The position numbers and the translations under genes were made by a program. The notes beneath the pieces are model-generated. The model worked only from the letters and a program-made list of their open reading frames with translations. It did no database searches and was not told the DNA's origin. From positions 19,654,001 to 19,718,000 of the forward strand of contig NC_042999.1 of NCBI RefSeq assembly GCF_006345805.1: DNA of 64,000 bases, written 5' to 3'. This DNA comes from Octopus sinensis. Its lineage: Eukaryota. Within the stretch, counting starts at the first letter, position 1; each line of letters begins with the position of its first letter. This document shows positions 44,341-64,000 of the stretch, in pieces.

Positions 44341-44529
44341 ATCGCTTCTCGGCCTTTTGGCTAAGATCAAAGTGTAGTATCTGTTCTTATCAGCTTAATA
44401 TCTGATACGGTCCCTATTTGGGGCCATCGATATTAAACTGATTTTTAGAACGAGGCGAAGTGTTAGGGGCTTGCTCCGCCTTTGCCACGGGTTGTCCTGG
44501 TATTGCAGTGCTTCCGGGATTCAGCCCAC
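44341..44529 (+). ncRNA. U2: U2 spliceosomal snRNA, copy 1
   Basis: ATCGCTTCTCGGCCTTTTGGCTAAGATCAAAGTGTAGTATCTGTTC 5' end, branch-recognition GTAGTA, Sm site ATTTTTAG, loop IV TATTGCAG; 189 nt. Confidence 0.97.
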
Positions 44530-45124
44530 TCCCACCTGGGAGATACAAATTAAAAATAAAATCAGATATATCGTTACAACCACTTTTTTTTTCGTCATCT
44601 CAGCGGGTTTTCCATTAGTTATCGTTGCTAAAACCTTCCACGCCGTCAGCAAGCGGTTCCCTTCCGATCCCGACTAAACCCCACGGTTTTTGTTCTCTTT
44701 GTTTCCTCATTTCAAATTCCGTCATCGCTTTCACCCCAACTCCTTCCAGGTTCAGTGCCTTTTGATGAGATCCTTTTCCTTCTAAGCAGTCGATTCAAGT
44801 CTCCACTACTCTAAGTATACTTTCCTTTCTATATCCTTCACATCAGGGCGGACTTCTATACTCTTTCCTGTTTCAGACTTTCGACTGCGGCCATGTTGGG
44901 GCACAGCCACGAACATTTAGACGTTTAAATCGACACCAGCACTTATTTCTTTAAGCCTAGTACGTAAATTATCGTGTATAGCTGAAGATACTTGACCAAG
45001 GTGCCACGCAAAGAACTGATCTCGGACCCATGTTGTTGTGAAGCAAGCTCCTTACGAAACGGTCATTTCTACATATTTTTTTAAATTGCAAAGCAGCTGT
45101 TCCACAAAATACATCTTATGTAAC

Positions 45125-45425
45125 ACATCTGCTTCTAAAGTTGGTGCGACTATGAAATATATCAAGTATCTAACCAGAGGCGGTAAAGTCACCACAATAA
45201 AAGCAATATTCGTGTCAACGGAGCATGCAAGGGAGAACTCGACTCGAACCTTCCAAAGTGGAAATATTTTATTTTTACCTTTATATCTGGGACGTAGGAC
45301 GTCCCGGACAAAAGTTTAAAATGTCCCCCCAGAAGTAGAGGTAGGCTGGATTGTACCACACTTCTATACAAGAGGGAGGACAAGATACAATTGATCGAAA
45401 TTGCAAGAGACGGGCCTACAATTCA
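45125..45425 (+). pseudogene. Degenerate LINE ORF1-like fragment in U2 spacer
   Basis: YLTRGGK...LFLPLYLGRRTSRTK; paralogous to 49163-49612 and 62514-62975. Confidence 0.45.
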
Positions 45426-45623
45426 AGATTGTTATACATTTTGAGTATTGTTATCACTAGTGATATGAAGATAAAACTTTGTATTTTGTATTTTATGTGT
45501 AGATGTATATATATAGATGTACATGTAATATGTACACATATATATACACATATATACATGATCTAGCACTATGACCCGGCAACAACGGGTTATAATGCTA
45601 GTTGGTCTATATATGTGATTTGA

Positions 45624-45941
45624 GGGCGCAATAGCCTAGTAGTTAGGGCAGCGGACTCGCGGTTGTAGGATCGCAGGTTCGATTCCCAGACCTGGCGTTG
45701 TGAGTGTTTATTGAACGAAAACACCAAAAGCTCCACGTTCTCCGACAGGGGGTGGTGGCGATCCCTGCTGTACCCTTACAACACTATTTTCTCACTCTCT
45801 CTCTGTCTCTCTTTTGTTGGCCTGCTCGCTTAGCCTGCGGGGTGGCGTCATTTGAAGGCCAAAAGAATGCAAAGCGCATTGTGACCAGCGATGAATAGCA
45901 ACATCTGATAGCTTGGTCGGTCACGGTGATCACAGTGATAT
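45624..45941 (+). mobile_element. tRNA-derived SINE family D upstream of U2 copy 2
   Basis: A box TAGCCTAGTAG, B box GGTTCGATTCCC, non-tRNA body; three copies in the cluster. Confidence 0.7.
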
Positions 45942-46078
45942 ATGATTTGAAAATCCACTAATCGAGGATTGAACGCTCTGGTCAGAGGTCAGTCAGATTC
46001 ATTCACCGTGACCTGCTACCCACCAGCCAGTCACTAGCCAACACTGCTGATAAGTGATTAGCTGCGCCCCCTATCATG

Positions 46079-46333
46079 GTGACGTCACTTGTCTTAGGCC
46101 TTTACTTTATGTAATGATAAGAACATATATTACCATTCAACCTACAATATCTATATATACTTACAAATAATTGATTTAAAGATATTAGAAATATTTTAAA
46201 CTAGGAAATGTAAGGATTGAATGTGTTTACAATATAGCAGGTAATTAAATGTGATTGGAATAAACAATTTACACATCAGTGGGTGTAATATTAACTTGTG
46301 TAAAGATAGTCTGTGGTAAAACGGGCAAAATTT
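46079..46333 (+). promoter_or_regulatory. U2 upstream block, copy 2
   Basis: GTGACGTCAC at -255. Confidence 0.6.
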
Positions 46334-46522
46334 ATCGCTTCTCGGCCTTTTGGCTAAGATGAAAGTGTAGTATCTGTTCTTATCAGCTTAATATCTGATA
46401 CGGTCCCTATATGGGGCCATCGATATTAAACTGATTTTTAGAACGAGGCGAAGTGTTAGGGGCTTGCTCCGCCTTTGCCACGGGTTGTCCTGGTATCGCA
46501 GTGCTTCCAGGATTCAGCCCAC
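46334..46522 (+). ncRNA. U2: U2 snRNA, copy 2 (C28G variant)
   Basis: Full-length match; GATG instead of GATC at 46358-46361. Confidence 0.93.
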
Positions 46523-47062
46523 TCCCACCCGGGAGACACAAATTAAATCTAAAATCAGATATGTTGCTACAGTCTCCCTTTTTTTTTTACATCATCTCAG
46601 CGGGTTTTCCGTTAGTTGTCCTTGCTGAAGACCTTCCTCGCCGTCAGCAAGCGGTTCACGTTCGATCCCAACTCAACACCACGGCTTTTGTCCTCTTTGC
46701 TTCCTTATTTCAAATCCCGTATTCGCTTACACACCAACCCCTACCAGGTTCAGTGCCTTCAGAGAACTCCCTTTTTTTCTTTCAAGAGGTCGATTCAGGT
46801 CTCCCCTTTAAGTATATACTTTTCTCTCTCTCTCCTTCACACCAGTCTCAGGTGCCAAACAAAGTCACCCGGAAACTGCATTTCCACTTCACTACAACAA
46901 AGTATGACAACAGCAAAAACAATGTAGATGCACAGAAGAAGTGATATTCCCTATCTATCAACCTACTAGAAATAACAGCTAACAGACAGGATCAATTGGT
47001 AGGAATTCCAGTATCTTCCACCAATAGTACTTACTAGTATAGTCTTTGAAAGAAAACAGCAG

Positions 47063-47783
47063 GGATCTTTTCCTTTTGAACGGCAGTTTTCAAAATAATT
47101 TCCAGTTAACTAAACACTTTTAAATTCGGTAGAATGTGTCAAAATAAAACATTTTTTTCTTTTGGCTTTCTTGAGAAATTGTAATTTGTAAGTTTAACGT
47201 CGTTTAATTTTTCGAATTTTAACCAATCGATGGCCTCTATTTAGCTAAAATCATTTGCTGCGTCTAAAACTGAGACAACATCCTGTCACTGTTATGTTTA
47301 CGTTCGAAAAGCGTGTGTATAAAATTATAGAATTATTTTGTTTGTTTATCGTCTAAATTGTTTTCCATTGCTTTCGTTTAAGCCTTTTTTTTCTTCTTAA
47401 ACAATGGAAAATAGTTTAAACAATACACGTGTATGAATAATTTTAGACACATGCGTAACAATTAAATTAATTTAACAATTAAAAAGAAAAAAAACGAACG
47501 GCTAAATTTTAGGGTTTGAGTTAGTGTAGGGTTAGGGTTAGGTCAGTGACAGGATGTTGTCTCAGTTTTAGACGCAGCAAAGGATTTTAGCTCAATAGAG
47601 GCCATCGATTTGTTAAAATTCGAAAAATTAAATTACATTAAACTTATAAATTACAATTTTCTCAAGAGGGCCAAAATAAAAAAAAATGTTTTCTTTTGAC
47701 ATATTCTACCAGTATACGAAGTTTAAAAGTCTTTAGTTAACTAGAAATGATGTTGAAAACTGCCATTCAAAAGGAAAAGATCC
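47063..47783. mobile_element. Long-TIR (~230 bp) non-autonomous DNA transposon, Merlin-like, with 8-bp TSD
   Basis: Termini GGATCTTTTCC/GGAAAAGATCC; TSD AACAGCAG at 47055-47062 and 47784-47791. Confidence 0.8.
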
Positions 47784-48410
47784 AACAGCAGATGCGATTG
47801 TAACGGGTGGGAGGTCTTGAAATCACTATAATCGCCAGTATGTATTTCCGTCTCCAACGCCAGACTAATACCCATACAGCCCCTAATCACTTCAAAAAGA
47901 TTTTGGTATCGCCAGATTTATATAACTGTAAACATTAATATATGATAAATCCAATTTTTACTTTTCAAGATCAAATAAAACTAACAGAAAGATGGAAAAT
48001 AATCCCTTCCACTGAAAGCAAAAGGCCTTGAAATTTTGGGGGATGGGACTACTCGATTACAAAGACCTCAGCTTCCACTGTACTAAATATATTGCTAGAA
48101 ATAGCAGCTAACTGACCACCAACAAATCGACCAAATGATTGCAACATTATTTGCTCAATGAGAACTGAAATGTTAGCTTCACCACAGTCCAGTTTCACTC
48201 CCAACGTTCACCTGACGCTATTGTAACTAATATTTTACGTTTAGTATGGTGAACAGTGGTACAAAACCGAGTACCTGTTGGTTTGAAGCAAACTTGTTAC
48301 TTTAACAACGAACCAATCGCGACCTGGTCGCCCGACTTACAACGTGTAGCAATCTAAACAGAGCATTCGACATTAACGAAGTTGTGAGTCCCTTAAATAT
48401 TTGTCATTGG

Positions 48411-48905
48411 ACTATATATATAAAACTGAGAATGAGTGTCTGTCTATATGTCTGACTGTGTTTCCCTAAAACATGAGAACTACACAACCAATTTCATTCA
48501 AATTTTACACATGCCTTACTTATGGTACATGTCGTTTCTTGGGCAAAAAAATGTTCAACTTCTTGCCAATAGCAATATCATATCTTCTCCACTATTTCAG
48601 TATTATGTGTAAAAAGTGAAACAAAAACATTTCTCTGTTTTATGTTAGAAACTTTCACAATAAAATTAGAGATAATAATAACAATTGAATTATATGTAGT
48701 AAGTAATAATTAAAATCAAACTGAAGTTCAATATAATCGTAACATAACAAAAGTAAAAATAGCAATTGGTATAAAATTGCATCAATGACTTGATCTTGAA
48801 TAAGTGGTTTCACATGAATGGGAATAAATTAAACTAAATCAACCTCGTACTGCTTTTTGATTCACCGTAAGGTTTGTTGTTATTATTATTACTGTTTAAC
48901 TATTG
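48411..48905 (+). mobile_element. Possible Helitron/Helentron-type non-autonomous element (second copy at ~60978-61485)
   Basis: CTATATATATAAAACTGAGAA start followed by GTCT-type repeats; duplicated in the cluster. Classification is tentative. Confidence 0.35.
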
Positions 48906-49162
48906 TTATCACGTTTGTTGGTTTCGTAAGGGAAACGTTGTTGTGTTGCATTTGTTAAATAATTGTAAACTGTTACCGTCCCCCTCTGGGAGAAAGAGCT
49001 TTGGTTATTGTTTAAAAATTAAATTGTGTCCCTGTTTGGTGAAATTGACAATATTTTCACCGTTTATACGGAAGCATTTTTGTTAGAATGCCTTCGATAG
49101 AAGAAAGTCCAAAAATGAATTTCGCTGCAGCCGTCGACGGGCGCGTACTCATTAAAATTAAA

Positions 49163-49612
49163 ATGGAAGAAATACAAACCTATTTCGAATTGATCACCGA
49201 CAAAGACGGTGAAACTAGGATAACACCACCAAAGGACATAAAAAATTAAATTAAAGAAAAGACTATTATCTATAAAGTATACAATGTAGAGCTAAACAGA
49301 TTTGAACAGCTAGAGGAAAGCACCATCGAAAAGTGTCTTGGTGCGACTATGAAATATATTGAAGTATCTAACCAGAGGCGGTAAATTCGCCAGAATAGAA
49401 GCAAGGTTCGAGTCAAGGAAGAACTCGATCGAACTTGCAAAGTGGAAATATTTTATTTTTACCTTTATATCTGGGACATAGGACGTCCCGGACAAAAATT
49501 TAAAATGTTGCCCAAGAAGTAGAGGTAGACTGGATTGTATTCACACTTCTATACAAGAGAGAGGACAAGATACAAATGATCGAAATTGCAAGAGACGGGC
49601 CTACAATTCCAG
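49163..49612 (+). pseudogene. Degenerate LINE ORF1-like fragment
   Basis: MEEIQTYFELITDKDGETRITPP...YKVYNVE...; contains stops and frameshifts. Confidence 0.45.
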
Positions 49613-49808
49613 TCTGTTATATATTTTGAGTATTGTTATATCTAGCGATATCAAGATATAACTTTGTATTTTGTATTTTATGTGTAGATGTATATATATG
49701 GATGTACATGTAAAATGTACACACATATATATACATATATACATGAACTAGCACTATGAATCGCCAACGACGGGTCATAATCCTAGTTGGTCTATATATG
49801 TGATGTGA

Positions 49809-50122
49809 GGGCGCAATGGCCCAGTGGTTAGGGCAGCGGATTCGCGGTTGTAGGATCTCATGTTCAAATCCCAGACCTGGCGTTGTGAGTGTTAATTGAG
49901 CGAAAATACCAAAAGCTCCACGACGCTCCGGCAGGGGGTGGTGGAGATCCCTGCTGTACTCTTTCGCCACAAATTTCTCTGTCTCTCTCTCTCTATTGTT
50001 GGCCTGCTCGCTTAACCTGCGGGGTGGCATCATTTGAAGGCCAAAAGAATGCAAAGCGCATTGTGACCAGCGATGAAGAGCAACATCTAATAGCCTGGTC
50101 GGTCACGGTGATCACAGTGATA
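49809..50122 (+). mobile_element. SINE family D upstream of U2 copy 3
   Basis: Paralog of 45624-45941. Confidence 0.7.
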
Positions 50123-50265
50123 TATGATATGAAAATAAGATGCACTAATCGAGGGTGGGACGCTCTGGTCAGAGAACAGTCAGTTTCATTAACCGTGACC
50201 TGCTACCCACCAGCCAGTCACTAGCCAACACTGCTGATAAGTGATTAGCCGCGCCCCCTATCATG

Positions 50266-50520
50266 GTGACGTCACTTGTCTTAGACGTTTACTTTACGCA
50301 ATGGTAAGAACATATATTACCATTCAACATACAATATCTATATAAACTTACAAATAATTAATTTAAAGATATTAGAAATATTTTAAACTAGAAAATTTAA
50401 GAATTCAATGTGTTTACAATATAGCAGGTAATTAAATGTGATTGGAATAAATAATTTACACATCAGTGGGTGTAATATTAACTTGTGTAAAGATAGTCTG
50501 TGGTAAAACAGCTAAAATTT
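50266..50520 (+). promoter_or_regulatory. U2 upstream block, copy 3
   Basis: GTGACGTCAC at -255; TTACAC-atcagtgg-GTGTAA at about -65 to -45. Confidence 0.6.
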
Positions 50521-50709
50521 ATCGCTTCTCGGCCTTTTGGCTAAGATCAAAGTGTAGTATCTGTTCTTATCAGCTTAATATCTGATACGGTCCCTATTTG
50601 GGGCCATCGATATTAAACTGATTTTTAGAACGAGGCGAAGTGTTAGGGGCTTGCTCCGCCTTTGCCACGGGTTGTCCTGGTATTGCAGTGCTTCCAGGAT
50701 TCAGCCCAC
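50521..50709 (+). ncRNA. U2: U2 snRNA, copy 3
   Basis: Full length, identical to copy 5. Confidence 0.97.
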
Positions 50710-51242
50710 TCCCTCCCGGGAGATACAAATTAAGAATAAAATCAGATATATTGTTACAGTCCTCTTTTTGTTTTCATCATCTCAGCGGGTTTTCCGTTAG
50801 TTGTCGATGCTAAAGACCTTCCTCGCCATCAGCAAGCGGTTCACGTTCGATCCCGACTCAGCCCCACGGTTTTTGTCTTCTTTGCTTCCTTATTTCAAAT
50901 CCCGTCATCGCTTTCACGCCACCCCCTACCAGGTTCAGTGCCTTTTGAGGAGACCCTTTTTTCTTCTGCGAAGTCGATTCGAGTCTCCCCTTTAAGTATA
51001 TTTTCCTTCTCTCTCCTTCACACTAGTCTCAGGTGCCAAGCAAAATCACACGGAAACTGCATTTCCACTTCACTACAACAAATATGACAACAGCAAAAAC
51101 AATGTAGATGCACAAAAGAAGTGGGATTCAATATCTATCAACCAACTAGAAATAGCAGCTAACAGACAGGATCAATTGGTAGGAATTCCAGTATCTGCCG
51201 CCAATAGTACTTACTAGTATAGTCTATGAAAGAAAACAGCAG

Positions 51243-51964
51243 GGATCTTTTCCTTCCGAACGGCAGTTTTCAACATAATTTCTAGTTAACTAAACACTTT
51301 TAAACTTCGTATACTGGTAGAATGTTTCAAAATAAAACATTTTTTTCTCTTGTCTTTCTTGAGAAGATTGTAATTTGTAAGTTTAACGTAGTTTAATTTT
51401 TCGAATTTTAACCAATCGATGGCCTCTATTTAGCTCACATCATTTGCTGCGTCTAAAACTGAGACAACATCCTGTCACTGTTATGTTTACTTTTGGAGAG
51501 CGTGTGTATAAAATTTATAGAATTATTTTGTTTGTTAATTGTTTAAATTATTTTCCATTGCTTTCGTTTTAGCCTTTCGTTTTTTTTTTCTTAAGCAATG
51601 GAAAATAGTTTAAACAATACACGTGTATCTCAAAACAAAATGAATAATTTTAGACACACGCCTAACAATTTAAATTAATTTAACAATTAAGAAACAAAAA
51701 AACGAAAGGCTAAAATTTAGGGTAGGGTCAGTGAGAGGATGTTGTCTCAGTTTTAGACGCAGCAAATGATTTTAGCTGAATAGAAGCCATCGATTGGTTA
51801 AAATTCGAAAAATTAAACTACGTTAAACTTACAAATTACAATTTTCTCAAGAAAGCCAAAAGAAAAAATGTTTTATTTTGACACATTCTACCAGTATACG
51901 AGTTTAAAAGTGTTTAGTTAACTAGAATTTGTGTAGGAAACTGCCGTTCGAAAGGAAAAGATCC
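51243..51964. mobile_element. Long-TIR element, type A
   Basis: Same termini as 47063-47783; right flank is GATATATT. Confidence 0.8.
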
Positions 51965-52861
51965 GATATATTTCGTCTTTACTTTCATTTTACCTGTTGC
52001 AGTCATTAAACTGAGGCCATGCTGGGGCATCGCCTCGAAGAATTTTTAGTCGAATGTATCAACTCCAATATTTTTTCAAATGATTTTCAACAAGGACATA
52101 GTTAAACCTAAATGTCTTTTAACATGATAGAGATAACAGCCAAATCTTTAAACATTATTTTTATAAATTTCAAATAAACAAAAACGGATACCGTGGTTGT
52201 AACAAAACAAACACTTACATATTTTAACTATGGGACGGGGTTTGTTTGAGGGGCTCTTGTCTTAGGGGGCTTTTTTTAAAGAGTCTTTTGACCTGCTCTA
52301 ATTTACCCGCGTTTTCATATCATTAATTACTAAATCAAAAGAAATTCAATTTATCGCATCTTTAACGACTTCGGTTATTGCTTATGAGAAAAAAAAGGCG
52401 GCGACAATGTATATTTCAAAAGTGGATAAAACAAATTCTCATACTGGGGTTGGATGGGGCTGAGATTCTAACTGGGGGTGGAGGTGGGGCTGAGATTCAA
52501 ACTGCAGGTGCTTAACACCCCATAGCTCCCCCATTGCTACGTGCCTGGCTGCAGGTCACAGTACCTGAATCTCACTGACCTCTGACCAGAGCGTCCATTC
52601 CTTGATTAGTGTATCTTACATTCAAATCATATTCATAGACCAATAACAAATATTTAAGAGACTCACATCTTCGTTAATGACGAATGCTTTGCTTTGATAG
52701 CTACACCTTGTAAGTCGGGCGAACAGGTACGGATTGGTTCGTTGTTAAATAAGTTTGCTTCAAACCAACAGGTACTCGGTTTCGTACCACTGTTTACCAT
52801 ATTAAACGTAAAATATTATTTACAATAGCGTCAGGTGAACGTTGTGAGTGAAACTGGACTG

Positions 52862-54080
52862 GGATATTTTCCTTTTGATGGACGGAATTTTCTAGTTAAC
52901 TAAACAATTTGAAACTTCGTATACTGGTAGAATGTGTCAAAAGAAAACATCATTGTTAACAAAATTGAAAGCAAGATTGTAATTTGTAAGATTAACGTAG
53001 ATTAATTCTTCGAATTTTTGCCCATGAAATGCCAGCATTTGAGCTGAAATCATTTGCTGCGTCTAAAATCTCAGACAATATCCTCTTGGAACGTAAACAG
53101 CACACACACACACACACGTGTTATTCATCCTTCTCTCTTCAGTCTTCTGTCTTCTGCATGTGCTAGAAGCAGCAGCTATATCTTTAAATCGATGAATTTC
53201 GTTGTCCAATAAAAATATTAACGATATTTTTTGAAAATTTTCTTTTCTTTTTTTTTACCGAAAAGGCTTCTTCCATGGTTTTGAGGGGCCAGAAACAACA
53301 AAAACAAAACAATAATATGCCTAAATCGGTCTAGAGTGGGATATAAGGGTACGCGGGGAGTGTGGGTCGTATTGTAAAAATTTGCGAAATATTTATTCAT
53401 AAAAGGATGCCCCAGCTTGTCGGAGGCTCTGATGTAAATTGGGAAAAAAATCCTCGACACCAGTGCGTAATTGGTTCTTAATTTATCGACCCCGAAACGA
53501 TGAAACATTGACCCCCGCCCTTCTGGTTAATTTACCTTTTGTGTAAAGTTGTTCCGGCAAGGGGCAAAACACAGAGGGCACAAAGCATGAGATACAAAAG
53601 TATTAAGTCGATTCTATCGACACCAGTGCGAACCCACGAACGTGTATGTATGCTTGTGTGCGTATGTGTGTGTACGTATATCTCCGTTTGTATGTGTGTG
53701 TACGCTTATATATTAATTACTATGTACTTGTGCAAATGTATATGCATGTGTTTCAGAGAGAGAGAGAGAGTGACAGTGTGTGTGTGTGCGTGTGTGTGCA
53801 AGTGTACGTGAGTATGCATTTGAATATAAGTGTGCGTGTGTGTATGCGGCGTGCGTCTGCTATGTTTGTTTATATCGATAACGCAGCAAATAATTTCAGC
53901 TCAAATGTGGTATTTCATTAGTTAAGATTCGAAGAATTAAACTACGTTAATCCTACAAATTACAATTTCGTTTTCAATTTTGTTTACAATAATGTTTTCT
54001 TTTGACACATTCAATCAGTATACGAAGTTTCAGATTGTTAAGTTAACTAGAAAATTCCGTCTATCAAAAGGAAAAGATCC
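52862..54080. mobile_element. Long-TIR element, type B (~1.2 kb)
   Basis: ~200-bp inverted arms ending GGAAAAGATCC; interior has CA repeats and SINE C pieces; right flank is AATATATC. Confidence 0.75.
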
Positions 54081-54413
54081 AATATATCAGAAGTTTGACC
54101 AGGCTACGTGTCAAGAAGTGTGAAAAAATGAAAAATTAAATAAAAGTGGTGCTATTAAGTTAGACATGGCCTGGGCCAATAATGGCCGAAACCTATCAAA
54201 GTATCAAAGTAAATATAAGCTTGGGGCTTTTGTCCACTTTCACACTTTAAGTAGGGGCTTTTGTCCGTACCTCTGTTCAGCACGCCCAGCTATCAAGATA
54301 GCACCCCCAGTTGCAATCGGCTGGCAACTTCGCTGCCTGCTACCCAGCAGCCAGTAACACTGCTGCTAGTGTTGCTAATGACAAGTAAGTTATTCGCCAT
54401 ATTCCCTATCTTG

Positions 54414-54670
54414 GTGACGTCACTTGTCTTAGACGTTTACTTTTACACAATGGTAAGAACTTATATTATCATTCAACATACAATATTTATATATACTTAC
54501 AAATAATTGATTTAAAGATATTAGAAATATTTTAAACTAGAAAATGTAAGGATTGAATGTGTTTACAATATAGCAGGTAATTAAGTGTGATTGGAATAAA
54601 CAATTTACACATCAGTGGGTGTAACATTAACTTGTGTAAAGATAGTCTGTGGTAAAATGGCTAAAATTTT
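54414..54670 (+). promoter_or_regulatory. U2 upstream block, copy 4
   Basis: GTGACGTCAC at -257. Confidence 0.6.
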
Positions 54671-54859
54671 ATCGCTTCTCGGCCTTTTGGCTAAGATCAA
54701 AGTGTAGTATCTGTTCTTATCAGCTTAATATCTGATACGGTCCCTATTTGGGACCATCGATATTAAACTGATTTTTAGAACGAGGCGAAGTGTTAGGGGC
54801 TTGCTCCGCCTTTGCCACGGGTTGTCCTGGTATTGCAGTGCTTCCAGGATTCAGCCCAC
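54671..54859 (+). ncRNA. U2: U2 snRNA, copy 4
   Basis: Full length; G83A in stem IIb. Confidence 0.97.
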
Positions 54860-55394
54860 TCCCACACGGGAGATACAAATTAAAAATAAAATCAGATATG
54901 TTGTTACAACCAACTTTTTTTTTTTTCATCATCTCAGTGGGTTTTCGTTAGTTGTCGTTGCTAAAGACCTTCCTCGCCGTTAGCAAGCGGTTCGCGTTCG
55001 ATCCCGACTCAGCCCAAAGGCTTTTGTCCTCTTTGCTTTCTCATTTCAAATCCCGTCTTCGATTTCACGCCACCCCCTACCAGAATCAGTGCCTTTTGGG
55101 GAGACCCTTTTTTCTTTCAAGAAGTTGATTCAGGTCTCCCCTTTAAGTATATTTTCCTTCTCTCTCCTTCACACCAGTCTCAGGTGCCAAGCATAGTCAC
55201 ACGGAAACTGCATTTCCACTTCACTACAACAAAGTATGACAACAGCAAAAACAATGTGGATGCACAAAAGAAGTGACATTACCTATCTATCAACCTACTA
55301 GAAATAGCAGCTAACAGACAGGATCAATTGGTAGGAATTCCAGTATCTGCCGCCAATAGTACTTACTAGTATAGTCTTTGAAAGAAAACAGCAG

Positions 55395-56100
55395 GGATCA
55401 TTTCCTTTTGAACGACAGTTTTCAAAATAATTTCCAGTTAACTAAAAACTTTTAAACTTCGTATACTGGTAGAATGTGTCAAAATAAAACATCTGTTTCT
55501 TTTGGCTTTCTTGAGAAAATTGTAATTTGTAAGTTTAACGTAGTTTAATTTTTCGAATTTTAACCAATCGATGGCCTCTATTTAACTAAAATCATTTTCT
55601 GCGTCTAAAACTGAGACAACTGTTATGTTTACGTTCGGAAAGCGTGTGTATAAAATTATAGAATTACTTTGTTTGTTAATTGTTTAAATTATTTTCCATT
55701 GCTTTCGTTTTTTTTTTTTCTTAAGCAATGGAAAATAGTTTAAACAATACACGTGTATCTCAAAACAAAAACAAAACGAATAATTTTAGACACACTCGTA
55801 ACAATTATATTAATTTAACAATTAAGAAAAAAAAAAAACGGAAGGCTAAAATTCAGGGTCGGGTCAGTGAGAGGATGTTGTCTCAGTTTTAGACGCAGCA
55901 AATGATTTTAGCTGAATAGAAGCCATCGATTGGTTAAAATTCGAAAAATTAAATTACGTTAAACTTACAAATTACAATTTTCTCAAAGCCAAAAGAAAAA
56001 AAATGTTTTATTTTGACACATTCTACCAGTATACGAAGTTTAAAAGTGTTTAGTTAACTAGAAATTGTGTAGAAAACTGCCGTTCAAATGGAAAAGATCC
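55395..56100. mobile_element. Long-TIR element, type A
   Basis: Paralog of 51243-51964. Confidence 0.8.
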
Positions 56101-56873
56101 GATATATTTCGTCTTTACTTTCATTTTACTTGTTGCAGTCATTAAACTGAGGCTATGCTGGGGCATCACCTCGAAGAATTTTTAGTCGAATATATCAACT
56201 CAAATATTTTTTTTAATGATTTTCAACAAGTACATAGTTAAACCTAAAAAAGTCTTTTAACATGATGGAGATAACAGCCAAATCTTTAAATATTATTTTT
56301 ATAAATTTCAAATGAACAAAAACGGATACGGTGGTTGTAAAAAGAACAAAACAAAACACTTACATATTTTGACTATGGGAAGGGGTTCGTTTGAAGGGCT
56401 CTTGTCTTAGGGGCCTTTTTTATGAGAAAAAAAGTCGGCGACAATGTATTATTTCAAAAGTGGATAAAACAAATTCTCATACTGGGGTGGGATGGGGCTG
56501 AGATTCTAACTGCGGGTGCTGAGCACGCCATAGCTCCCCCATGGCTACGTGCCTGGTTGCAGGTCACAGTACATGAATCTCACTGACCTCTGACCAGAGC
56601 GTCCATTCCTTGATTAGTGCATCTTACGTTCATATCATCTTCATAGACCAATAACAAATATTTAAGAGACTCACATCTTCGTTAATGTCGAATGCTTTGT
56701 TTTGATAGCTATACCTTGTAAGTCGGGCGACCAGGTTGCGATTGGTTCGTTGTTAAAGTAACAAGTTTGCTTCAAACCAACAGGTACTCGCTTTCGTACC
56801 ACTGTTTACCATATTAAATGTAAAATATTATTTACAATAGCGTCAGGTGAACGTTGTGAGTGAAACTGGACTG

Positions 56874-57111
56874 GGATCTTTTCCTTTTGATGGACGGAAT
56901 TTTCTAGTTAACTAAACAATTTGAAACTTCGTATACTGGTAGAATGTGTCAAAAGAAAGCATTACTGAAAACAAAATTGTAATTTGTAAGTTTAACGTAG
57001 TTTAATTCTTCGAATTTTAACCAATGAATTGCCAGCATTTGAGCTGAAATCATTTGCTGCGTTTAAAAACTCAGACAATATCCTCTTGCAACGTAAACAG
57101 CACACACACAC

Positions 57112-57157
<46 letters not shown>

Positions 57158-57804
57158 TTGTTCATCCTTCTCTCTTCTATCTTCTGCATTTGCTAGAAAT
57201 AACAGCTATATCTCTTAAATCGATGAATTTCGTTGCCCAATAAAAATATTAACGATATTTTTTGAATATTTTCTTTTCTTTTTTTTTACCGAAAAGGCTT
57301 CTCCCATGGTTTTGAAGGGCCACAAACAACAAAAACAAAACAATAATATGCCTAATTTGGTCTAGAGTGGGATATGAGTGTACGCGTTGAGTGTGGGTCG
57401 TATTGTAAAAATTTGCGAAATATTTATTCATAAAAGGATGCCCCAGCTTGTCGGAGGCTGTGATATAATTTGGAAAAAATCCTCGACACCAGTGCGTAAT
57501 TGGTTCTTAATTTATCGACCTCCGAAACGATGAAACTTTGACTCCCCCCTTCTGGTTTATTTACCTTTTGTGTATATTTGTTGCGGAAAGGGGCAAAACA
57601 CAGAGAGGACAAAGCATGAGGTACAAAAGTAATAAGTCGATTCTATCGACACCAGTGCGATACCACGAACGTGTATGTAAGCTTGTGTGCGTATGTGTGT
57701 GTACGTATATCTCCGTTTGTATGTGTGTGTACAATTTTATATTAATTACTATGTGCTTGTGCAAATGTATATGCATGTGTTTCAGAGAGAGAGAAAGAGT
57801 GACA

Positions 57805-57844
<40 letters not shown>

Positions 57845-58125
57845 AAGTGTACGTGTGTATGTATCTGAATATATGTGTGCGTGTGTGTATGCGGCGTGCG
57901 TCTGCTATGTTTGTTTATATCGATAACGCAGCAAATGATTTCAGCTCAAATGTGGCATTTCATTTGTTAAGATTCAAAGAATTAAACTACGTTAATCTTA
58001 CAAATTACAATTTTGTTTTCAATTTTGTTTACAACAATGTTTTCTTTTGACACATTCTACCAGTATACGAAGTTTCAAATTGTTTAGTTAACTAGAAAAT
58101 TCCGTCCATCAAAAGGAAAAGATCC
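56874..58125. mobile_element. Long-TIR element, type B
   Basis: Paralog of 52862-54080. Confidence 0.75.
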
Positions 58126-58392
58126 AATATATCAGAAGTATAACCAGGCTAGGCGTCAAGAAGTGTGAAAAAATGAAAAAATAATATAAAAATTTAAGCA
58201 TGGGGTTTTTGTCCACTTACACACTTTAACTTGGGGCTTTTGTCCGTACCTCTGTTCAGCACCCCAGCTATCAAGATAGCACCCCCAGTTGCCATCGGCT
58301 GGCAACTTGGCTGCCTGCTACCCAGCAGCCAGTAAACACTTCCGCTAGTGTTGCTGATGCCAAGTAAGTGAATCGCCATATTCCCTATCTTG

Positions 58393-58648
58393 GTGACGTC
58401 ACTTGTCTTAGACGTTTACTTTATATAATGATAAGAACGTATATTAACATTCAACATACGATATTTATATATACTTACAAATAATTGATTTAAAGATATT
58501 AAAAATATCTTAAACTAGGAAATGCAAGGATTGAATGTGTTTACAATATAGCAGGTAATTAAGTGTGATTGGAATAAATAATTTACACATCAGTGGGTGT
58601 AACATTAACTTGTGTAAAGATAGTCTGTGGTAAAATGGCTAAAATTTT
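58393..58648 (+). promoter_or_regulatory. U2 upstream block, copy 5
   Basis: GTGACGTCAC at -256. Confidence 0.6.
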
Positions 58649-58837
58649 ATCGCTTCTCGGCCTTTTGGCTAAGATCAAAGTGTAGTATCTGTTCTTATCA
58701 GCTTAATATCTGATACGGTCCCTATTTGGGGCCATCGATATTAAACTGATTTTTAGAACGAGGCGAAGTGTTAGGGGCTTGCTCCGCCTTTGCCACGGGT
58801 TGTCCTGGTATTGCAGTGCTTCCAGGATTCAGCCCAC
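58649..58837 (+). ncRNA. U2: U2 snRNA, copy 5
   Basis: Full length, identical to copy 3. Confidence 0.97.
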
Positions 58838-59370
58838 TCCCACCCGGGAGACACAAATTAAAAATAAAATCAGATATGTTGTTACAGTCCCCTTTTTGTT
58901 TTCATCATCTCAGCGGGTTTTCCGTTAGTTGTCGATGCTAAAGACCTTCCTCGCCGTCAGCAAGCGGTTCCCGTTCGATCCCGACTCAACCCCACGGTTT
59001 TTGTCCTCTTTGCTTCCTCATTTCAAATCCCGTCATCGCTATCGCGCTACCCCCTACCAGGATCAGTGCCTTTTGATGAGACCCTTTTTTCTTCTGAGAA
59101 GTCGATTCGAGTCTCCCTTTAAGTATATTTTCCTTCTCTCTCCTTCACACTAGTCTCAGGTGCCAAGCAAAGTCGCACGGAAACTGCATTTCCACTTCAC
59201 TACAACAAAGTTTAACAACAGCAAAAACAATATGGATGCACAAAAGAAGGGACATTCCCTATCTATCAACCAACTAGAAATAGCAGCTAACAGACAGGAT
59301 CAATTGGTAGGAATTCCAGTATCTGCCGCCAATAGTACTTACTAGTATACTCTTTAAAAGAAAACAGCAG

Positions 59371-59873
59371 AGAACTTTTCCTTTTGAACGGCAGTTTTCA
59401 ACATAATTTCTAGTTAACTAAACACTTTTAAACTTCGTATACTGGTAGAATGTGTCAAAATAAAACATATTTTTTTTTTGGCTTTCGTGAGAAAATTGTA
59501 ATTTGTAAGTTTAACGTAGTTTAATTTTTCGAATTTTAACCAATCGATGGCTTCTATTTAGTTAAAATCATTTGCTGCGTCTAAAACTGAGACAACATCC
59601 TGTCACTGTTATGTTTACGTTCGGAAAGCGTGTGTAGAAAATCATAGAATTATTTTATTGTTAATTGTTTAAATTAATTTCCATTGTTTTCATTTTAGCC
59701 TTTCGTCTTTTTCTTTTCTTATGCAATGGAAAATAGTTTAAACAATACACGTATATCTCAAAACAAAGACGAAGTGAATAATTTTAGACACACGCGTAAC
59801 AATTAAATTAATTTAACAATTAAGAAAAAAAAACGAAAGGTTAATATTTGGGCTAGGGTTAGTGTGGTTAGGG
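59371..59873. mobile_element. Long-TIR element type A, right arm missing
   Basis: Left arm and interior present, then a switch to a SINE C fragment at ~59875-60015. Confidence 0.7.
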
Positions 59874-60271
59874 TCGTCAACTTTGCCTTTCATCCTTTCG
59901 GGGATGATAAATTTAGTACCAGTTACGCACTGGTGTCGATATAATCGACATAATCCGTTTGTCTGTCCTTGTTTGTCCCCTCTGTGTTTAGCCCCTTGTG
60001 GGTAATAAAGAAATATATATCAGAAGTTTGACCAGACTAGGCGTCAAGAAGTGTGAATAAAAAAACCAAAAAATAAAATAAAAATATTAGCATATGGCTT
60101 TTTTTCCAACTTTCACACTTTAAGTACCTCTGTTCAGCACCCCCAGCTATCAAGATAGCACCCCCAGTTGCAATCGGCTGGCTACTTGGCTGCCTGCTAC
60201 CCAGCAGCCAGTAAACACTGCTGCTAGTGTTGCTGCTGATAAGTAAGTGATTCGCCATACTCCCTATCTTA

Positions 60272-60528
60272 GTGACGTCACTTGTCTTAGACGTTTACTT
60301 TACACAATGGTAAGAACGTTTGTCACTATTCAACATACAATATCTAAATATATTTACAAATAATTGATTTAAAGATATTAAAAATATTTTAAACTAGGGA
60401 AATGTAAGGATTGAATGTGTTTACATAATAGCAGGTAATTAAGTGTGATTGGAATAAATAATTTACACATCAGTGGTTGCATCATTAACTTGTGTAAAGA
60501 TAGTCTGTGGAAAAAAAGCGGAAAATTT
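60272..60528 (+). promoter_or_regulatory. U2 upstream block, copy 6
   Basis: GTGACGTCAC at -257. Confidence 0.6.
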
Positions 60529-60717
60529 ATCGCTTCTCGGCCTTTTGGCTAAGATCAAAGTGTAGTATCTGTTCTTATCAGCTTAATATCTGATACGGTC
60601 CCTATTTGGGGCCATCGATATTAAACTGATTTTTAGAACGAGGCGAAGTGTTAGGGGCTTGCTCCGCCTTTGCCACGGGTTGTCCTTGTATTGCAGTGCT
60701 TCCAGGATTCAGCCCAC
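60529..60717 (+). ncRNA. U2: U2 snRNA, copy 6
   Basis: Full length; G159T in stem IV. Confidence 0.95.
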
Positions 60718-62513
60718 TCCCACCCGGGAGATACAAATTAAAAAGAAAATCAGATATATCGTTACAACCACCTTTTTTTTCACCTCAGCTGGTTTTCCGT
60801 TAGTTGTCGTTGCTAAAGAACTTCCTCGCCGTCAGCAAGCGGTTCAGTTCGATCGCGACTCAACCCCATGCATTTTGTCTTCTTTGCTTTCTCATTTCAA
60901 ATCCCGTCATCGCTTTCACCCCACCCCTACCAGGTTCAATGCCGAAGATATCAGTCCCTTAAATATTTGTTATTGGACTATATATATAAAACTGAGAAGG
61001 TGTGTCTGGTCTGCCTGTCTTACTGTGTTTCCCTAAAACTTGAGAACTACACAACCAATTTCATTCAAATTTTACACTTGCCTTACTAAGGGTCCATATA
61101 GTTTCATGTGCAAATAAAATGTTCAACGACTGGCCTTGGGCAAGCCCAAGGCAATATCATATCTTCTCCACTATTTCAGAATTACGTGTTAAAAGTCAAA
61201 CAAAAACTTTCTCAATTTTATGTGAGATACTTTCACTGTCAAATTAGAGATAATAATAACAATTGAATTATATGTAGCAAGTGATAATTAAAATCAAACT
61301 CAAGTATAATATAATCGTAACATAACAAAAGTAAAAGTAGCAATTGGTACAATATTACATCTTTTACTTGAACTTGAATAAGTGATTTCACATGAATGGG
61401 AATAAAATAAATTAAATCAACTGAGTACTGCTTTTTGACTCACCGCAAGGTTTTTTGTTATTATTATTACTGTTTAACTATCGATATCACGTTTGTTCGT
61501 TCCTCGTTTCCTACGGCGGTTTTCGATTTATTTTACCGCTTTCTCTTAGGTTATATTACTTTATTTGTCTTTTCTCTGAGTAAGGGAGAATATAATGATT
61601 CAACGTCACTTATACTAAAGTGTTATAATTATAACTAAAAACCCTAACTACAGTTATAACGTCATATAGGCATATACGCATGGAACGCTATATTAATGAC
61701 ATGTATGTTGAATATTTTAATCGTGTCCTTTAATCCGCTGTAAGAAACATAAATCAAAGATTACAGAAATGCATATTTATCTATGCTTAGTTGAAAAACA
61801 AACATGAAGAGAAACATTTTCTTTTAAATTATTTTTTATTATATAAATATAACATTTTATATTATTTACAGTAAGAAAGATAACTTTGTCGTGAAGAAAA
61901 ACGACTATAAATTCCTTAGCTAATTTCTTGTTTCTATCTAATACATTAACCAACAAATCAAAATAGATTTGTGATTAACTTAGACATGGCATAAAAATTA
62001 CCGATGTCTCCAAAAGAGTGAGTGACGTGGAGTTATGTGACAACCAACGATCACTATAGTTTCTTCCCAAAACCCGGATTTTTATAACTGCTCAACTTGA
62101 CTGAAAAGAATCGAAATTCAGGACAAATATTCTTTACGAAACATTTAGAATCTTTATATGAGCAGTTATATTAACCAATAGGAAAAAAGAAAATGATAAT
62201 TCTTCGGCAAAAACATTACGTCATATTGCCAATTCACGCCACATTTCAAAATGGCTAAAATGGTTATTGCTACACTCGCAAGGGAAACGTTGTTGTATTG
62301 CATTTGTTAAATAATTGTAAACTGTAACCCTCCCCATCTGGGAGAAGGAACTTTGTTTATTGTTTAAAAATTGAATTGTGTCCCTGTTTGGTGAAATTGA
62401 CAATATTTTCACCATTTATACGGAAGAATTTTTATTGGAATGCTTTCCATAGAAGAAAGTGTAAAAATGAATTTCGCTGCAGCCGTCGGCGGGCGCCACT
62501 CAATAAAATTAAA

Positions 62514-62975
62514 ATGGAAGAAATACAAACCTATTTCGGATTGATCACCGACAAAGACGGTGAATCTAGGATAACACCACCAAACGAAATACAAAATTAA
62601 ATTAAAGAAAAGACTATTGTCTATAAAGTATACAATGTAGAGAAAACAAGATTTGAACACCTGCAGGAAAGCACCATCGAAAAGTGTCTTGGTGCGACTA
62701 TGAAAGATTAAAGTATCTAACCAGAGGCAGTAAATTCCCCACAATAGAAGCAAGGTTCGAGTCAACGGAGCGTGCAAGGGAGTGCTCGACTCGAACCTTG
62801 CAAAGTGGAAGTATTCTATTTTTACCTTTATATCTAGGACGTAGGACGTCCCGGACAAAAATTAAAATTTCCCCCCCAGAAGTCGAGATAGGCTGGATTG
62901 TAGCCACACTTCTATACAAGAGGAAGGACAAGATACAATTGATCGAAATTGCAAGAGACGGGCCTACAATTCCAG
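62514..62975 (+). pseudogene. Degenerate LINE ORF1-like fragment (best-preserved copy)
   Basis: YLTRGSKFPTIEARFESTERARECSTRTLQSGSILFLPLYLGRRTSRTKIKISPPEVEIGWIVATLLY. Confidence 0.5.
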
Positions 62976-63159
62976 TCTGTTATATATTTTGAGTATTGTT
63001 ATAACTAACGATATCAAGATATAACTTTGTATTTTGTATTTTATGTATAGATGTATATATAAAGATGTACGTAGAATATGTACACATATATACATAAATT
63101 AGCACAGTGACACAGCAACGACGGGTCAAAATGCTAGTTGGTCTATATATGTGATTTGA

Positions 63160-63475
63160 GGGCGCAATGGCCCAGTGGTTAGGGCAGCAGACTCGCGGTT
63201 GTAGGATCACAGGTTCGATTCCAAGACCTGGCGCTGTGAATGTTAATTGAGTGAAAACTCCACGAGGCTCTACGACGCTCCGGCAGGGGTTTGTGGCGAT
63301 CCCTGCTGTAATCTTTCGCCAAAACTTTCTCTCTATATATCTCTGTTTTGTTGGCCTGCTCGATTAGCCTGCGAGGTGGCGTCATTTGAAGGCTAAAAGA
63401 ATGCAAAGTGCATTGTGACCAGCGATGAATAGCAAAATCAGATAGCCTGGTCTGTCACGGTGATCACAGTGATAT
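63160..63475 (+). mobile_element. SINE family D
   Basis: Paralog of 45624-45941. Confidence 0.7.
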
Positions 63476-63479
63476 ATGA

Positions 63480-63694
63480 TTTGAAAATAAGATGCACTAA
63501 TCGAGGATTGAACGATCTGCTCAGAGGTCAGTCAGATTCATTCACCGTGACCTGCTACCCACCAGCCAGACACTAGCCAACACTGCTGATAAGTGATTAG
63601 CCGCGCCCCCTATCATGGTGACGTCACTTGTCTGAGACGTTTACTTTACGCAATGGTAAGAACATATATTACCATTCAACATACAATATCTATA
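63480..63694 (+). promoter_or_regulatory. Truncated (orphan) U2 upstream block
   Basis: CRE at 63618-63627; homology stops at ~63694 and no U2 follows. Confidence 0.6.
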
Positions 63695-64000
63695 TTAAAT
63701 TAATATCCAATTTTTTCACCCGTATTTTGACTTTAATTATAAAATAACATGTTCTCAAACCGGCAGTAAATTACTTGTGCAGTATTTATATCCGAGAAAT
63801 TAGCGCGCCTTAACGAGGGCATTTGAATGTAACTGTGAATATAATCGGCCGATCTGTTAGCCTCAATCCAACCTCGTGTTGATAGCTTCCGTGCAGTTCG
63901 ACAAATTTTATTTTTGACGTACTCTACTGATGAATCGAAGATATTTAAGTAAGAAAAATAACAATTTATTAACGATGAAACAATTGCATAGAGTTAATCG

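What the first reader, a model, noticed from the sequence alone, without database searches (positions are those of the whole stretch)
51243..58133. Split, inverted target site records a transposon-mediated inversion that was then duplicated with U2
Element A's right flank is GATATATT (51965-51972) and element B's right flank is AATATATC (54081-54088); these are exact reverse complements. The ~0.9 kb between A and B contains reverse-oriented copies of sequences found forward elsewhere (52660-52860 vs 48185-48380; 52560-52620 vs the alpha module). The simplest model is recombination between opposite TIRs of two family members, flipping the segment and one TSD half. The same pattern recurs at 56101 and 58126, so the rearranged 4-kb unit was duplicated afterwards. 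Here TIR elements act as hinges that remodel an snRNA array and may swap upstream modules.
Basis: partly seen in the sequence, partly recalled or inferred. Interest (0 to 1): 0.7.

Follow-up and report, generated by a model that had tools for sequence, protein, structure and literature searches.

The report
Transposon-made inversion inside a U2 array
Two small non-coding transposons in the spacer of a tandem U2 snRNA gene array (octopus-like genome) flipped about 2.1 kb of spacer and lost about 0.4 kb, most likely in one aberrant "reversed-ends" transposition; the rearranged 4-kb unit was later duplicated, which makes this a tidy fossil of a known mechanism with no visible effect on the U2 genes.

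Summary
A-type elements (51243-51964, 55395-56100) are followed by GATATATT. B-type elements (52862-54080, 56874-58125) are followed by its exact reverse complement, AATATATC. The spacer between them holds inverted copies of block X (48185-48421) and an 85-bp alpha fragment. Re-inverting restores the order seen in unit 2 and at 43490-43737.

- All A and B arms are pure A-type or B-type to the last base, so there are no chimeras.
- B's left flank is CTGGACTG, not the predicted CTGCTGTT.
- A's right AACAGCAG copy and about 400 bp (47784-48184), both intact in unit 2, are missing.

One event explains all of this: reversed-ends alternative transposition. A's right end and the facing end of a B copy then sitting at 48184/48185 inserted together into AATATATC about 0.9 kb away. 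That inverted B plus the spacer, discarded the segment between the elements, and made an inverted 8-bp target duplication, matching the family's 8-bp TSD.

Later duplication of the 4.15-kb unit is supported (about 92% identity, identical breakpoints). Swapping of promoter modules is not: the inversion lies 590 bp upstream of the next U2.

Known mechanism, new natural example. Interest is modest.

The parts
47063..47783 (.). A0: reference copy of the A element in unit 2. It has intact 8-bp direct TSDs, AACAGCAG at 47055-47062 and at 47784-47791.
   Evidence: This copy shows that the family makes 8-bp TSDs and that the A insertion predates the split of unit 2 from units 3-5.
47784..48184 (+). 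Segment I: A's right TSD copy plus about 390 bp of spacer. It is present in unit 2 and absent from units 3, 4 and 5. It is the inferred inter-transposon segment lost in the event.
   Evidence: no copy in 50256-60000. Its distal part (48092-48138) is collinear with the old paralogue at 43289-43332, so it is ancestral rather than an insertion.
48185..48421 (+). Block X in forward orientation (unit 2). Homology with the inverted copies begins exactly at 48185. The 8 bases at 48185-48192 (CAGTCCAG) are the inferred original target site of B, seen here as an empty site.
51243..51964 (.). A1: 722-bp foldback-like MITE with roughly 238-bp TIRs starting GGATCTTTTCC. Left flank AACAGCAG (51235-51242). 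It has no matching right TSD.
51965..51972 (-). Inverted copy of the target site (GATATATT, the reverse complement of AATATATC), abutting A1's right end.
51973..52861 (-). Inverted spacer segment M. It contains the 5' part of a dispersed repeat (51966 to about 52076), an unassigned stretch, the alpha' fragment (52551-52635, reverse) and block X (52629-52861, reverse).
52862..54080 (.). B1: 1219-bp element with 201-bp TIRs. It shares the terminal 17-mer GGATCTTTTCCTTTTGA with A, and its interior is SINE debris and microsatellites. Left flank CTGGACTG (the reverse complement of 48185-48192). It is inferred to have been inverted together with M.
54081..54088 (+). Forward copy of the target site AATATATC, abutting B1's right end. 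It is followed by R (54089-54210), the beta upstream module and U2 at 54671-54864.
55395..56100 (.). A2: the duplicate of A1 in unit 4.
56101..56108 (-). GATATATT, the duplicate of 51965-51972.
56109..56873 (-). Duplicate of inverted segment M, with alpha' at 56555-56638 and X at 56643-56873 (both reverse).
56874..58125 (.). B2: the duplicate of B1.
58126..58133 (+). AATATATC, the duplicate of 54081-54088. It is followed by R, beta and U2 at 58649-58842.
59372..60021 (+). Unit 5 derivative. A3 lacks its right TIR (it ends near 59870). It is joined to a 5'-truncated SINE fragment (59874-60015), whose 3' end abuts TATATC plus R. This is a roughly 2.3-kb deletion whose right edge lies 1-2 bp from the B-end/target junction.
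50521..50714 (+). U2 snRNA gene of unit 3 (185 bits). The inversion starts 1,251 bp downstream of its 3' end.

Best explanation
The structure is the fossil of one reversed-ends (inside-out) alternative transposition by two related non-autonomous TIR elements.

Inferred ancestral spacer: U2, downstream sequence, AACAGCAG, A, AACAGCAG, about 400 bp (segment I), B in the opposite orientation to today, CAGTCCAG, block X, alpha' fragment, about 0.6 kb, AATATATC, R, beta promoter, next U2.

A transposase supplied in trans recognised the shared 17-bp termini. It paired A's right end with the facing end of B, cut both, and inserted the pair into AATATATC about 0.9 kb downstream with an 8-bp stagger. 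Each element stayed attached to the chromosome by its other end. Three consequences followed:
- Segment I between the two ends was lost.
- B plus the 0.9-kb spacer was inverted.
- The 8-bp target was duplicated in inverted orientation, one copy at A's right end and one at B's now-right end.

The 4.15-kb unit carrying this scar was later duplicated in tandem, probably by unequal crossing-over in the shared promoter-proximal region. This gave units 3 and 4, and probably unit 5, which then lost about 2.3 kb.

Shown directly: the junctions, the 8-mers, the non-chimeric TIRs, the inverted blocks, the absence of I, and the duplication.
Inferred: B's former position and orientation, that everything happened in a single step, and the transposase.
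For: 1. A0 in unit 2 has perfect 8-bp direct TSDs (AACAGCAG on both sides). A1 and A2 keep only the left copy.
2. Homology between unit 2 and units 3/4 stops exactly at A's last base (47783/51964/56100).
3. B1 and B2 have no direct TSD. The orphan flanks of A and B are exact reverse complements over exactly 8 bp, the family's TSD length. P = 2e-4 per random pair.
4. X homology runs, inverted, right up to B's first base (48185 to 52861/56873).
5. Segment I (47784-48184) has no copy in units 3-5, although its distal part is ancestral (48092-48138 matches 43289-43332, upstream of the old X at 43490).
6. There are no chimeric TIRs. Each arm is A-type or B-type throughout, judged by the 10-bp block, GAACGGCAG versus GATGGACGG, and alignment columns 101-125 and 190-200.
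7. A and B share the terminal 17-mer GGATCTTTTCCTTTTGA with 0-2 mismatches, so one transposase could use both.
8. Re-inverting 51965-54080 (or 56101-58125) makes every match to unit 2 and to 43200-44340 forward and in ascending order: U2..A, then X, then alpha', then promoter.
9. This is the published signature of RET inversions in maize: loss of the inter-transposon segment (331 bp there), one TE inside and one just outside the inversion, and 8-bp TSDs precisely at the two termini. The same paper explicitly contrasts this with NAHR (PMC8225341; criteria also in PMC2775673).
Against: - No un-inverted copy carrying B survives in the window, so B's former site (48184/48185) and orientation are inferred.
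- No copy of the intact target (…GACGAAATATATCAGAAG…) exists in the window. Upstream of the target remnant in unit 5/6 there is a SINE tail with no homology to the re-inverted M.
- The 8-mer has a palindromic ATATAT core in an AT-microsatellite-rich genome.
- Only one clean TSD of the family (A0) is available to fix the TSD length and to judge target preference.
- The transposase and the superfamily are unknown.
- Concerted evolution within the array blurs the ordering of events.
Confidence: 0.62

Rival explanations
1. Two-step or 'flip' model. B inserted normally at AATATATC, making its own direct TSD. The DNA next to A's right end (AACAGCAG plus about 400 bp) was removed, either by an A-end adjacent deletion or by resection. 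The segment between A and B was then cut out at the two element ends and rejoined upside-down. On this model B never changed orientation.
For: The breakpoints are still exactly at element ends. The model is compatible with non-chimeric TIRs.
Against: It needs two events, or one event plus a 409-bp one-sided resection that stops flush at an element end. Rejoining excised flanking DNA to transposon ends is not the normal chemistry of cut-and-paste elements. End-joining of flanks usually leaves footprints, yet both junctions here are base-perfect. RET explains the loss, the inversion and the 8-mer in one standard reaction.
Confidence: 0.17
2. One reading: ectopic homologous recombination (NAHR) between oppositely oriented TIRs of A and B flipped the intervening segment and carried one half of B's TSD to A.
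For: It would also place the reverse complement of AATATATC next to A. Long TIRs about 80% alike offer some homology. There is precedent in the Galileo inversions of Drosophila buzzatii.
Against: Three predictions fail. The TIRs are not chimeric. B's left flank is CTGGACTG, not CTGCTGTT. About 409 bp, including A's right TSD, is missing. Identity of 80% with indels over about 170 bp is also a poor NAHR substrate.
Confidence: 0.04
3. Coincidence. The junctions arose by unrelated insertions, deletions or end-joining in AT-rich tracts, and the reverse-complement 8-mers are a by-product of a palindromic ATATAT core.
For: ATATAT precedes several copies of the dispersed repeat that starts at 51966. 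(T)ATATATC also precedes R in unit 6, where no B is present.
Against: The unconditional probability is 2e-4. The match is exactly 8 bp, equal to the family's TSD length. Both junctions are flush with intact element termini. Both elements lack direct TSDs. The DNA between the junctions is inverted and collinear once flipped. The family's one clean TSD (AACAGCAG) is not AT-rich.
Confidence: 0.07
4. A replication-based template switch (FoSTeS/MMBIR-type), stalled at the hairpin-forming foldback elements, produced the inverted segment.
For: A is nearly a perfect hairpin, with 238-bp TIRs plus a palindromic interior. Such structures stall replication forks.
Against: Template switches give microhomology junctions at arbitrary positions and usually produce inverted duplications. 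Here X exists only once per unit, the junctions sit at the exact element termini, and there is an 8-bp inverted duplication.
Confidence: 0.04

Closest known systems
Reversed-ends transposition (RET) inversions of maize Ac/fAc at p1-wwB54 (Zhang & Peterson 2004; Yu et al. 2011; Sharma et al. 2021, PMC8225341)
   Same: - Two nearby cut-and-paste elements with facing termini.
- A short inter-transposon segment that is lost (331 bp in maize, about 409 bp here).
- Inversion of the flank up to a nearby target.
- One element inside and one just outside the inversion.
- New 8-bp TSDs exactly at the two termini.
- Non-chimeric elements.
   Different: - The elements here are two sub-families of non-coding foldback-like MITEs of unknown superfamily, in an octopus-like animal genome.
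- The event is ancient and fixed (copies are 6-8% diverged), not recovered de novo.
- It is only 2.1 kb and sits in an snRNA array spacer.
- No progenitor allele is available.
Galileo (P superfamily, long TIRs) inversions 2j, 2q7 and 2z3 in Drosophila buzzatii by ectopic recombination (Delprat et al. 2009, PMC2775673)
   Same: Natural inversions bounded by long-TIR elements and diagnosed from rearranged TSDs.
   Different: In Galileo both TSD pairs are exchanged, the elements are chimeric and nothing is lost. Here only one 8-mer pair exists, the arms are not chimeric and about 0.4 kb is lost.
Tn10/IS10 inside-end ('inverse') intramolecular transposition giving deletion/inversions; P-element hybrid element insertion
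   Same: Ends from two different element copies act together on a nearby target. The segment between the inside ends is lost, the adjacent DNA is inverted and the target duplication ends up in inverted orientation. (This rests on my knowledge of that literature; hybrid element insertion is described.)
   Different: Tn10/IS10 is a bacterial composite transposon with a 9-bp TSD. P-element hybrid insertion uses sister chromatids or homologues. Neither involves MITEs or snRNA arrays.

Membership tests
RET / alternative-transposition inversion | Both breakpoints lie exactly at the termini of two class II elements, and those termini could serve one transposase. | tested here: met
   Homology to unit 2 ends at A's last base, and the new flank begins at B's last base. 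A and B share the terminal 17-mer.
RET / alternative-transposition inversion | A newly made target duplication of the family's TSD length lies at the two termini in inverted orientation. | tested here: met
   GATATATT and AATATATC are exactly 8 bp, and A0's direct TSD is 8 bp. That the duplication is new, rather than B's own TSD, is inferred.
RET / alternative-transposition inversion | The segment that lay between the two reversed ends is lost. | tested here: met
   47784-48184 is present in paralogous unit 2 and absent from units 3-5. The test uses a paralogue, not the true progenitor.
RET / alternative-transposition inversion | One element lies inside the inversion and the other just outside, and re-inversion restores collinearity. 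| tested here: met
   all matches become forward and ordered. B's own inversion cannot be seen directly because its TIRs are symmetric and there is no outgroup copy.
RET / alternative-transposition inversion | A progenitor arrangement exists with both elements in place and a single-copy target. | not testable with these tools
   No un-inverted B-bearing unit is in the window, and no eukaryotic genome collection is available. Exact-ORF look-ups found nothing.
NAHR (ectopic recombination) inversion between inverted TE copies | The elements at both breakpoints are chimeric. | tested here: not met
   the arms are pure A-type or B-type along their whole length.
NAHR (ectopic recombination) inversion between inverted TE copies | Both TSD pairs are exchanged and no sequence is lost. 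| tested here: not met
   B's left flank is CTGGACTG, not CTGCTGTT, and 409 bp is missing.
MITE / non-autonomous TIR (class II) element | Terminal inverted repeats, a target-site duplication, small size, no coding capacity and multiple copies. | tested here: met
   A has 238-bp TIRs, an 8-bp TSD and is 0.72 kb. B has 201-bp TIRs and is 1.2 kb. Within 50500-58700 no ORF reaches 100 aa. Three independent insertions lie in the window: A, B and the degraded copy at 15901-16335. Genome-wide copy number was not tested.
Specific superfamily (hAT, P, Merlin or MULE, which can make TSDs of about 8 bp) | A cognate transposase, and the superfamily's terminal motif. | not tested
   The termini start GGATC, which is not the hAT YARNG motif or the P CATG motif as I remember them. 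No autonomous copy is in the window, so I assign no superfamily.
U2 spliceosomal snRNA gene array | Full-length matches to Rfam RF00004 above the gathering score, arranged in tandem. | tested here: met
   Six copies score 175-187 bits against a gathering score of 46, all on the + strand, spaced 1.9-4.2 kb apart.

The most novel reading that the evidence does not exclude
The AATATATC site may be a recurrent transposase-dependent break point that has shaped unit length in this U2 array more than once.

- First event: the RET inversion.
- Second event: a break at B's end in a sister unit, patched with a 5'-truncated SINE cDNA. This deleted about 2.3 kb and produced the short unit 5. Its right edge lies 1-2 bp from the B-end/target junction.

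If so, trans-mobilised foldback MITEs would be the main driver of spacer-length heterogeneity in a cephalopod snRNA array. The locus would also be a fixed, natural animal example of RET and of retroposon-mediated repair of a transposase-made break.
Probability: 0.15. Interest if true: 0.5.

Novelty: new member of a known kind. Interest (0 to 1): 0.35.

Why it matters
Alternative transposition is well documented in experimental maize and Drosophila stocks. Fixed natural footprints that can be told apart from ectopic recombination are uncommon.

This locus carries all the distinguishing marks: non-chimeric ends, an inverted new TSD and loss of the inter-element segment. It would extend the mechanism to non-autonomous foldback MITEs in an octopus-like genome.

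It also shows how spacer length in an snRNA gene array varies through TE events followed by unit duplication. It does not appear to alter any U2 gene or its proximal promoter, so its functional importance is probably small.

Tried and rejected
1. Looked for the intact target. A local alignment of the re-inverted 51965-52628 against the sequence upstream of the target remnant in unit 5/6 (59700-60040) scored no better than the forward control (50 versus 55). That stretch is an unrelated SINE tail.
2. Looked for further family copies to measure TSD length and target preference. Only one more copy exists in the window (15901-16335). Its right end is degraded, so it yields no TSD.
3. Looked for other assemblies of the locus by exact-ORF look-up, using three ORFs including one inside B. 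Nothing is on record.
4. Distance-based ordering of the units. Units 3, 4 and 5 are equidistant (p about 0.059) and only slightly closer to each other than to unit 2 (0.068-0.080). The signal is mosaic: units 3-5 differ by 0.049 in the 310 bp downstream of U2, against 0.10 for units 3-4. Gene conversion therefore blurs the tree, which gives only weak support for unit 5 descending from a rearranged unit.
5. A hAT-style reading of the terminus (CAGGGATC…) was rejected, because it leaves no matching right end or TSD.
6. A composite A…B macrotransposon insertion was rejected, because the outer flanks AACAGCAG and AATATATC do not match.
7. ARAGORN calls no tRNA genes in 40000-64000, including the tRNA-like SINE heads there.


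Full report
CONTEXT

The window is eukaryotic. Rfam finds six full-length U2 snRNA genes, all on the + strand, starting at 44341, 46334, 50521, 54671, 58649 and 60529 (175-187 bits against a gathering score of 46). Their spacing is 1.9-4.2 kb. I call them units 1-6.

A LINE reverse-transcriptase ORF at 31647-32294 has its best named relatives in Octopus vulgaris (78%) and O. bimaculoides (64%). This agrees with my memory that the dispersed repeats here look octopod. It is a pointer to the taxon, not an identification.

Two kinds of distal upstream module precede the U2 genes:
- alpha: units 2 and 3, plus partial copies at 43644-43886 and 63461-63695.
- beta: units 1, 4, 5 and 6.

Alpha and beta share the proximal promoter region of about 170 bp.

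THE OBSERVATION

A self-comparison and an alignment of all arms define two related non-coding TIR elements.
- Element A is about 720 bp with roughly 238-bp TIRs and a partly palindromic interior. Copies: A0 47063-47783, A1 51243-51964, A2 55395-56100, and A3 from 59372, which is truncated.
- Element B is about 1.2 kb with 201-bp TIRs. Its interior is SINE debris and microsatellites. Copies: B1 52862-54080 and B2 56874-58125.

A arms and B arms are about 80% alike. They share the terminal 17-mer GGATCTTTTCCTTTTGA with 0-2 mismatches. They differ by a 10-bp block and several diagnostic stretches.

Flanks:

| Copy | Left flank | Right flank |
|---|---|---|
| A0 | AACAGCAG | AACAGCAG |
| A1, A2 | AACAGCAG | GATATATT |
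| B1, B2 | CTGGACTG | AATATATC |

A0 therefore has a perfect 8-bp direct TSD.

Two random 8-mers of this window are reverse complements with P = 2.0e-4. The caveat is the palindromic ATATAT core. ATATAT commonly precedes the dispersed repeat that begins at 51966. The 8-mer alone is therefore not conclusive.

WHAT THE STRUCTURE SHOWS

1. The A insertion is older than the split of unit 2 from units 3-5. It has the same left flank and the same position, with 89.5% identity over 45141-47783 versus 49338-51964.
2. Homology between unit 2 and units 3/4 stops at A's last base.
   - In unit 2, A is followed by the second AACAGCAG, then about 390 bp, then block X from 48185.
   - In units 3/4, A is followed by GATATATT and unrelated sequence.
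3. Block X reappears inverted. Its former left edge (48185) is flush against B's first base (52861/52862 and 56873/56874).
4. In the inverted block, X is directly followed by the start of alpha. The old paralogue at 43490-43737 shows the same X-then-alpha order in forward orientation.
5. Segment I (47784-48184) has no counterpart anywhere in units 3-5. Its distal part is ancestral, because 48092-48138 matches 43289-43332 upstream of the old X.
6. Every A arm is A-type and every B arm is B-type along its whole length, including the terminal nucleotides.

RE-INVERSION TEST

I flipped 51965-54080 (or 56101-58125) and removed one copy of the 8-mer. Every match to unit 2 then becomes forward and ascending:
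- U2 through A (46069-47783)
- X (48185-48421)
- alpha' (50122-50203)
- shared promoter (50199-50520)

The same holds against 43200-44340. That version, however, leaves A with AACAGCAG on the left and CAGTCCAG on the right, and with 401 bp missing.

MECHANISM

- chimeric elements;
- exchange of both TSD pairs;
- no loss of sequence.

All three fail.

The data match the published signature of reversed-ends transposition:
- two nearby elements with facing ends;
- loss of the inter-transposon segment;
- inversion from one element to a nearby target;
- one element inside the inversion and one just outside;
- family-length TSDs exactly at the two termini.

I therefore infer the ancestral order: A, segment I (about 409 bp including one CAGTCCAG), B in the opposite orientation, CAGTCCAG-X-alpha'-0.6 kb, AATATATC, R-beta-U2. 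A single reaction joined A's right end and B's facing end to the staggered-cut target.

Unit 2 then represents both the empty site of B (…CACCACA|CAGTCCAG|TTTCAC…) and the state before the deletion.

A rival I cannot exclude keeps B at the target with its own TSD. It needs a flush 409-bp loss plus a cut-and-flip of the inter-element segment. That is less parsimonious and chemically less natural, because both junctions are base-perfect.

My estimates for all five explanations considered:

| Explanation | Estimated probability |
|---|---|
| RET | 0.62 |
| Flip or two-step | 0.17 |
| Coincidence | 0.07 |
| NAHR | 0.04 |
| Template switching | 0.04 |

AFTER THE EVENT

Units 3 and 4 (50256-54403 and 54404-58382) are 91.5-92% identical along their length and have the same four junctions.

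The duplication boundary lies in the promoter-proximal homology shared by alpha and beta. That pattern is what unequal crossing-over produces and has nothing to do with TIR ends.

Substitution distances put the duplication at about 0.06 per site and the split from unit 2 at about 0.07-0.08. Gene conversion makes the signal mosaic.

The inversion contains no U2 gene and no proximal promoter. It ends 590 bp upstream of the next U2. The alpha' piece inside it was already an isolated 85-bp fragment. I find no support for swapping of upstream modules.

UNIT 5

A3 lacks its right arm. At about 59871 it joins a 5'-truncated SINE fragment through a GGTC microhomology. The SINE's intact 3' end (…AAAGAAATA) abuts TATATC plus R at 60016.

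The right edge of this roughly 2.3-kb gap is thus 1-2 bp from the B-end/target junction of units 3 and 4. There are two possible explanations, and I cannot decide between them:
- The AT-rich site is a general hotspot. It is the RET target, the 5' end of a dispersed repeat and the 3' end of a SINE.
- A transposase-made break at B's end was patched with SINE cDNA.

COMPARISON AND VERDICT

The closest known system is Ac/fAc reversed-ends transposition in maize. The same logic applies to Tn10 inside-end inversion/deletions and to P-element hybrid insertion.

The differences here are:
- the actors: two sub-families of non-autonomous foldback-like MITEs of unknown superfamily, with 8-bp TSDs and GGATC termini;
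- the host: an octopus-like animal;
- the setting: the spacer of an snRNA array;
- the age: the event is old and fixed.

It is a new natural example of a known mechanism, with no evident functional consequence. Interest 0.35.

LIMITS

No progenitor arrangement, no intact target, only one clean family TSD, and no external genome data were available.

Noticed in passing
window 59372-60021: Unit 5 carries a roughly 2.3-kb deletion relative to units 3 and 4. A3 loses its right TIR and joins a 5'-truncated SINE fragment (59874-60015) through GGTC microhomology. The SINE's 3' end abuts TATATC plus R, 1-2 bp from the B-end/target junction seen in units 3 and 4. This is either a hotspot or the repair of a transposase-made break.
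   Followed up: partly
window 43292, 46966, 48095, 51146, 55298, 59274 (+ strand): The 18-mer CTAGAAATAGCAGCTAAC occurs six times on one strand only, with none expected by chance. In units 2-5 it lies about 430-440 bp downstream of each U2 3' end. It occurs again about 90 bp upstream of block X in unit 2 (48095) and about 200 bp upstream of the old paralogue of X (43292). It is a conserved spacer motif of unknown role.
   Followed up: partly
window 43938-44759 vs 60124-60943: The first and last units of the array are the most similar pair (95.4% identity; beta-module p-distance 0.025, against 0.055-0.098 for the other pairs). This suggests either expansion of the array from its middle or recent gene conversion between the end units.
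   Followed up: no
window 48421-50122 and 60943-63470: In units 2 and 6, a composite insertion of 1.7-2.5 kb separates block X (or the U2 downstream region) from alpha. It includes a tRNA-like SINE head near 49805 and 63165. X and alpha are adjacent at 43490-43737 and in the inverted block. The inverted block therefore preserves an older spacer state than unit 2.
   Followed up: partly
window 42543-42670: A 129-bp near-perfect palindrome (96%), flanked on both sides by (TA)n and (TG)n microsatellites. It looks like a small foldback MITE inserted in a TA repeat.
   Followed up: no
window 15901-16335: A third, degraded member of the same TIR family. It has a 210-bp left arm about 74% identical to A, but only 24 bp of right arm and a missing terminal GATCC. 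No TSD is recognisable.
   Followed up: yes
window 30835-32294 and 35728-36126 (- strand): LINE reverse-transcriptase ORF fragments (PF00078). The best named relatives are Octopus vulgaris (78%) and O. bimaculoides (64%). Two high-scoring database hits are labelled as bacterial (Herbaspirillum MAG, E. coli partial). These are probably contaminated or mislabelled records.
   Followed up: partly
window 51966-52076, plus copies at 1217, 5670, 7874, 12253, 12735, 12935, 13567, 18407, 24515, 28477, 44864: An abundant dispersed repeat (…ACTTGTTTCAGTCATTTGACTGCGGCCATGCTGGAGCACCGCC…). Its 5' end is often preceded by TA or CA microsatellite. One copy supplies the sequence next to the RET target. Another (from 44847) ends the U2 downstream homology of unit 1.
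   Followed up: partly
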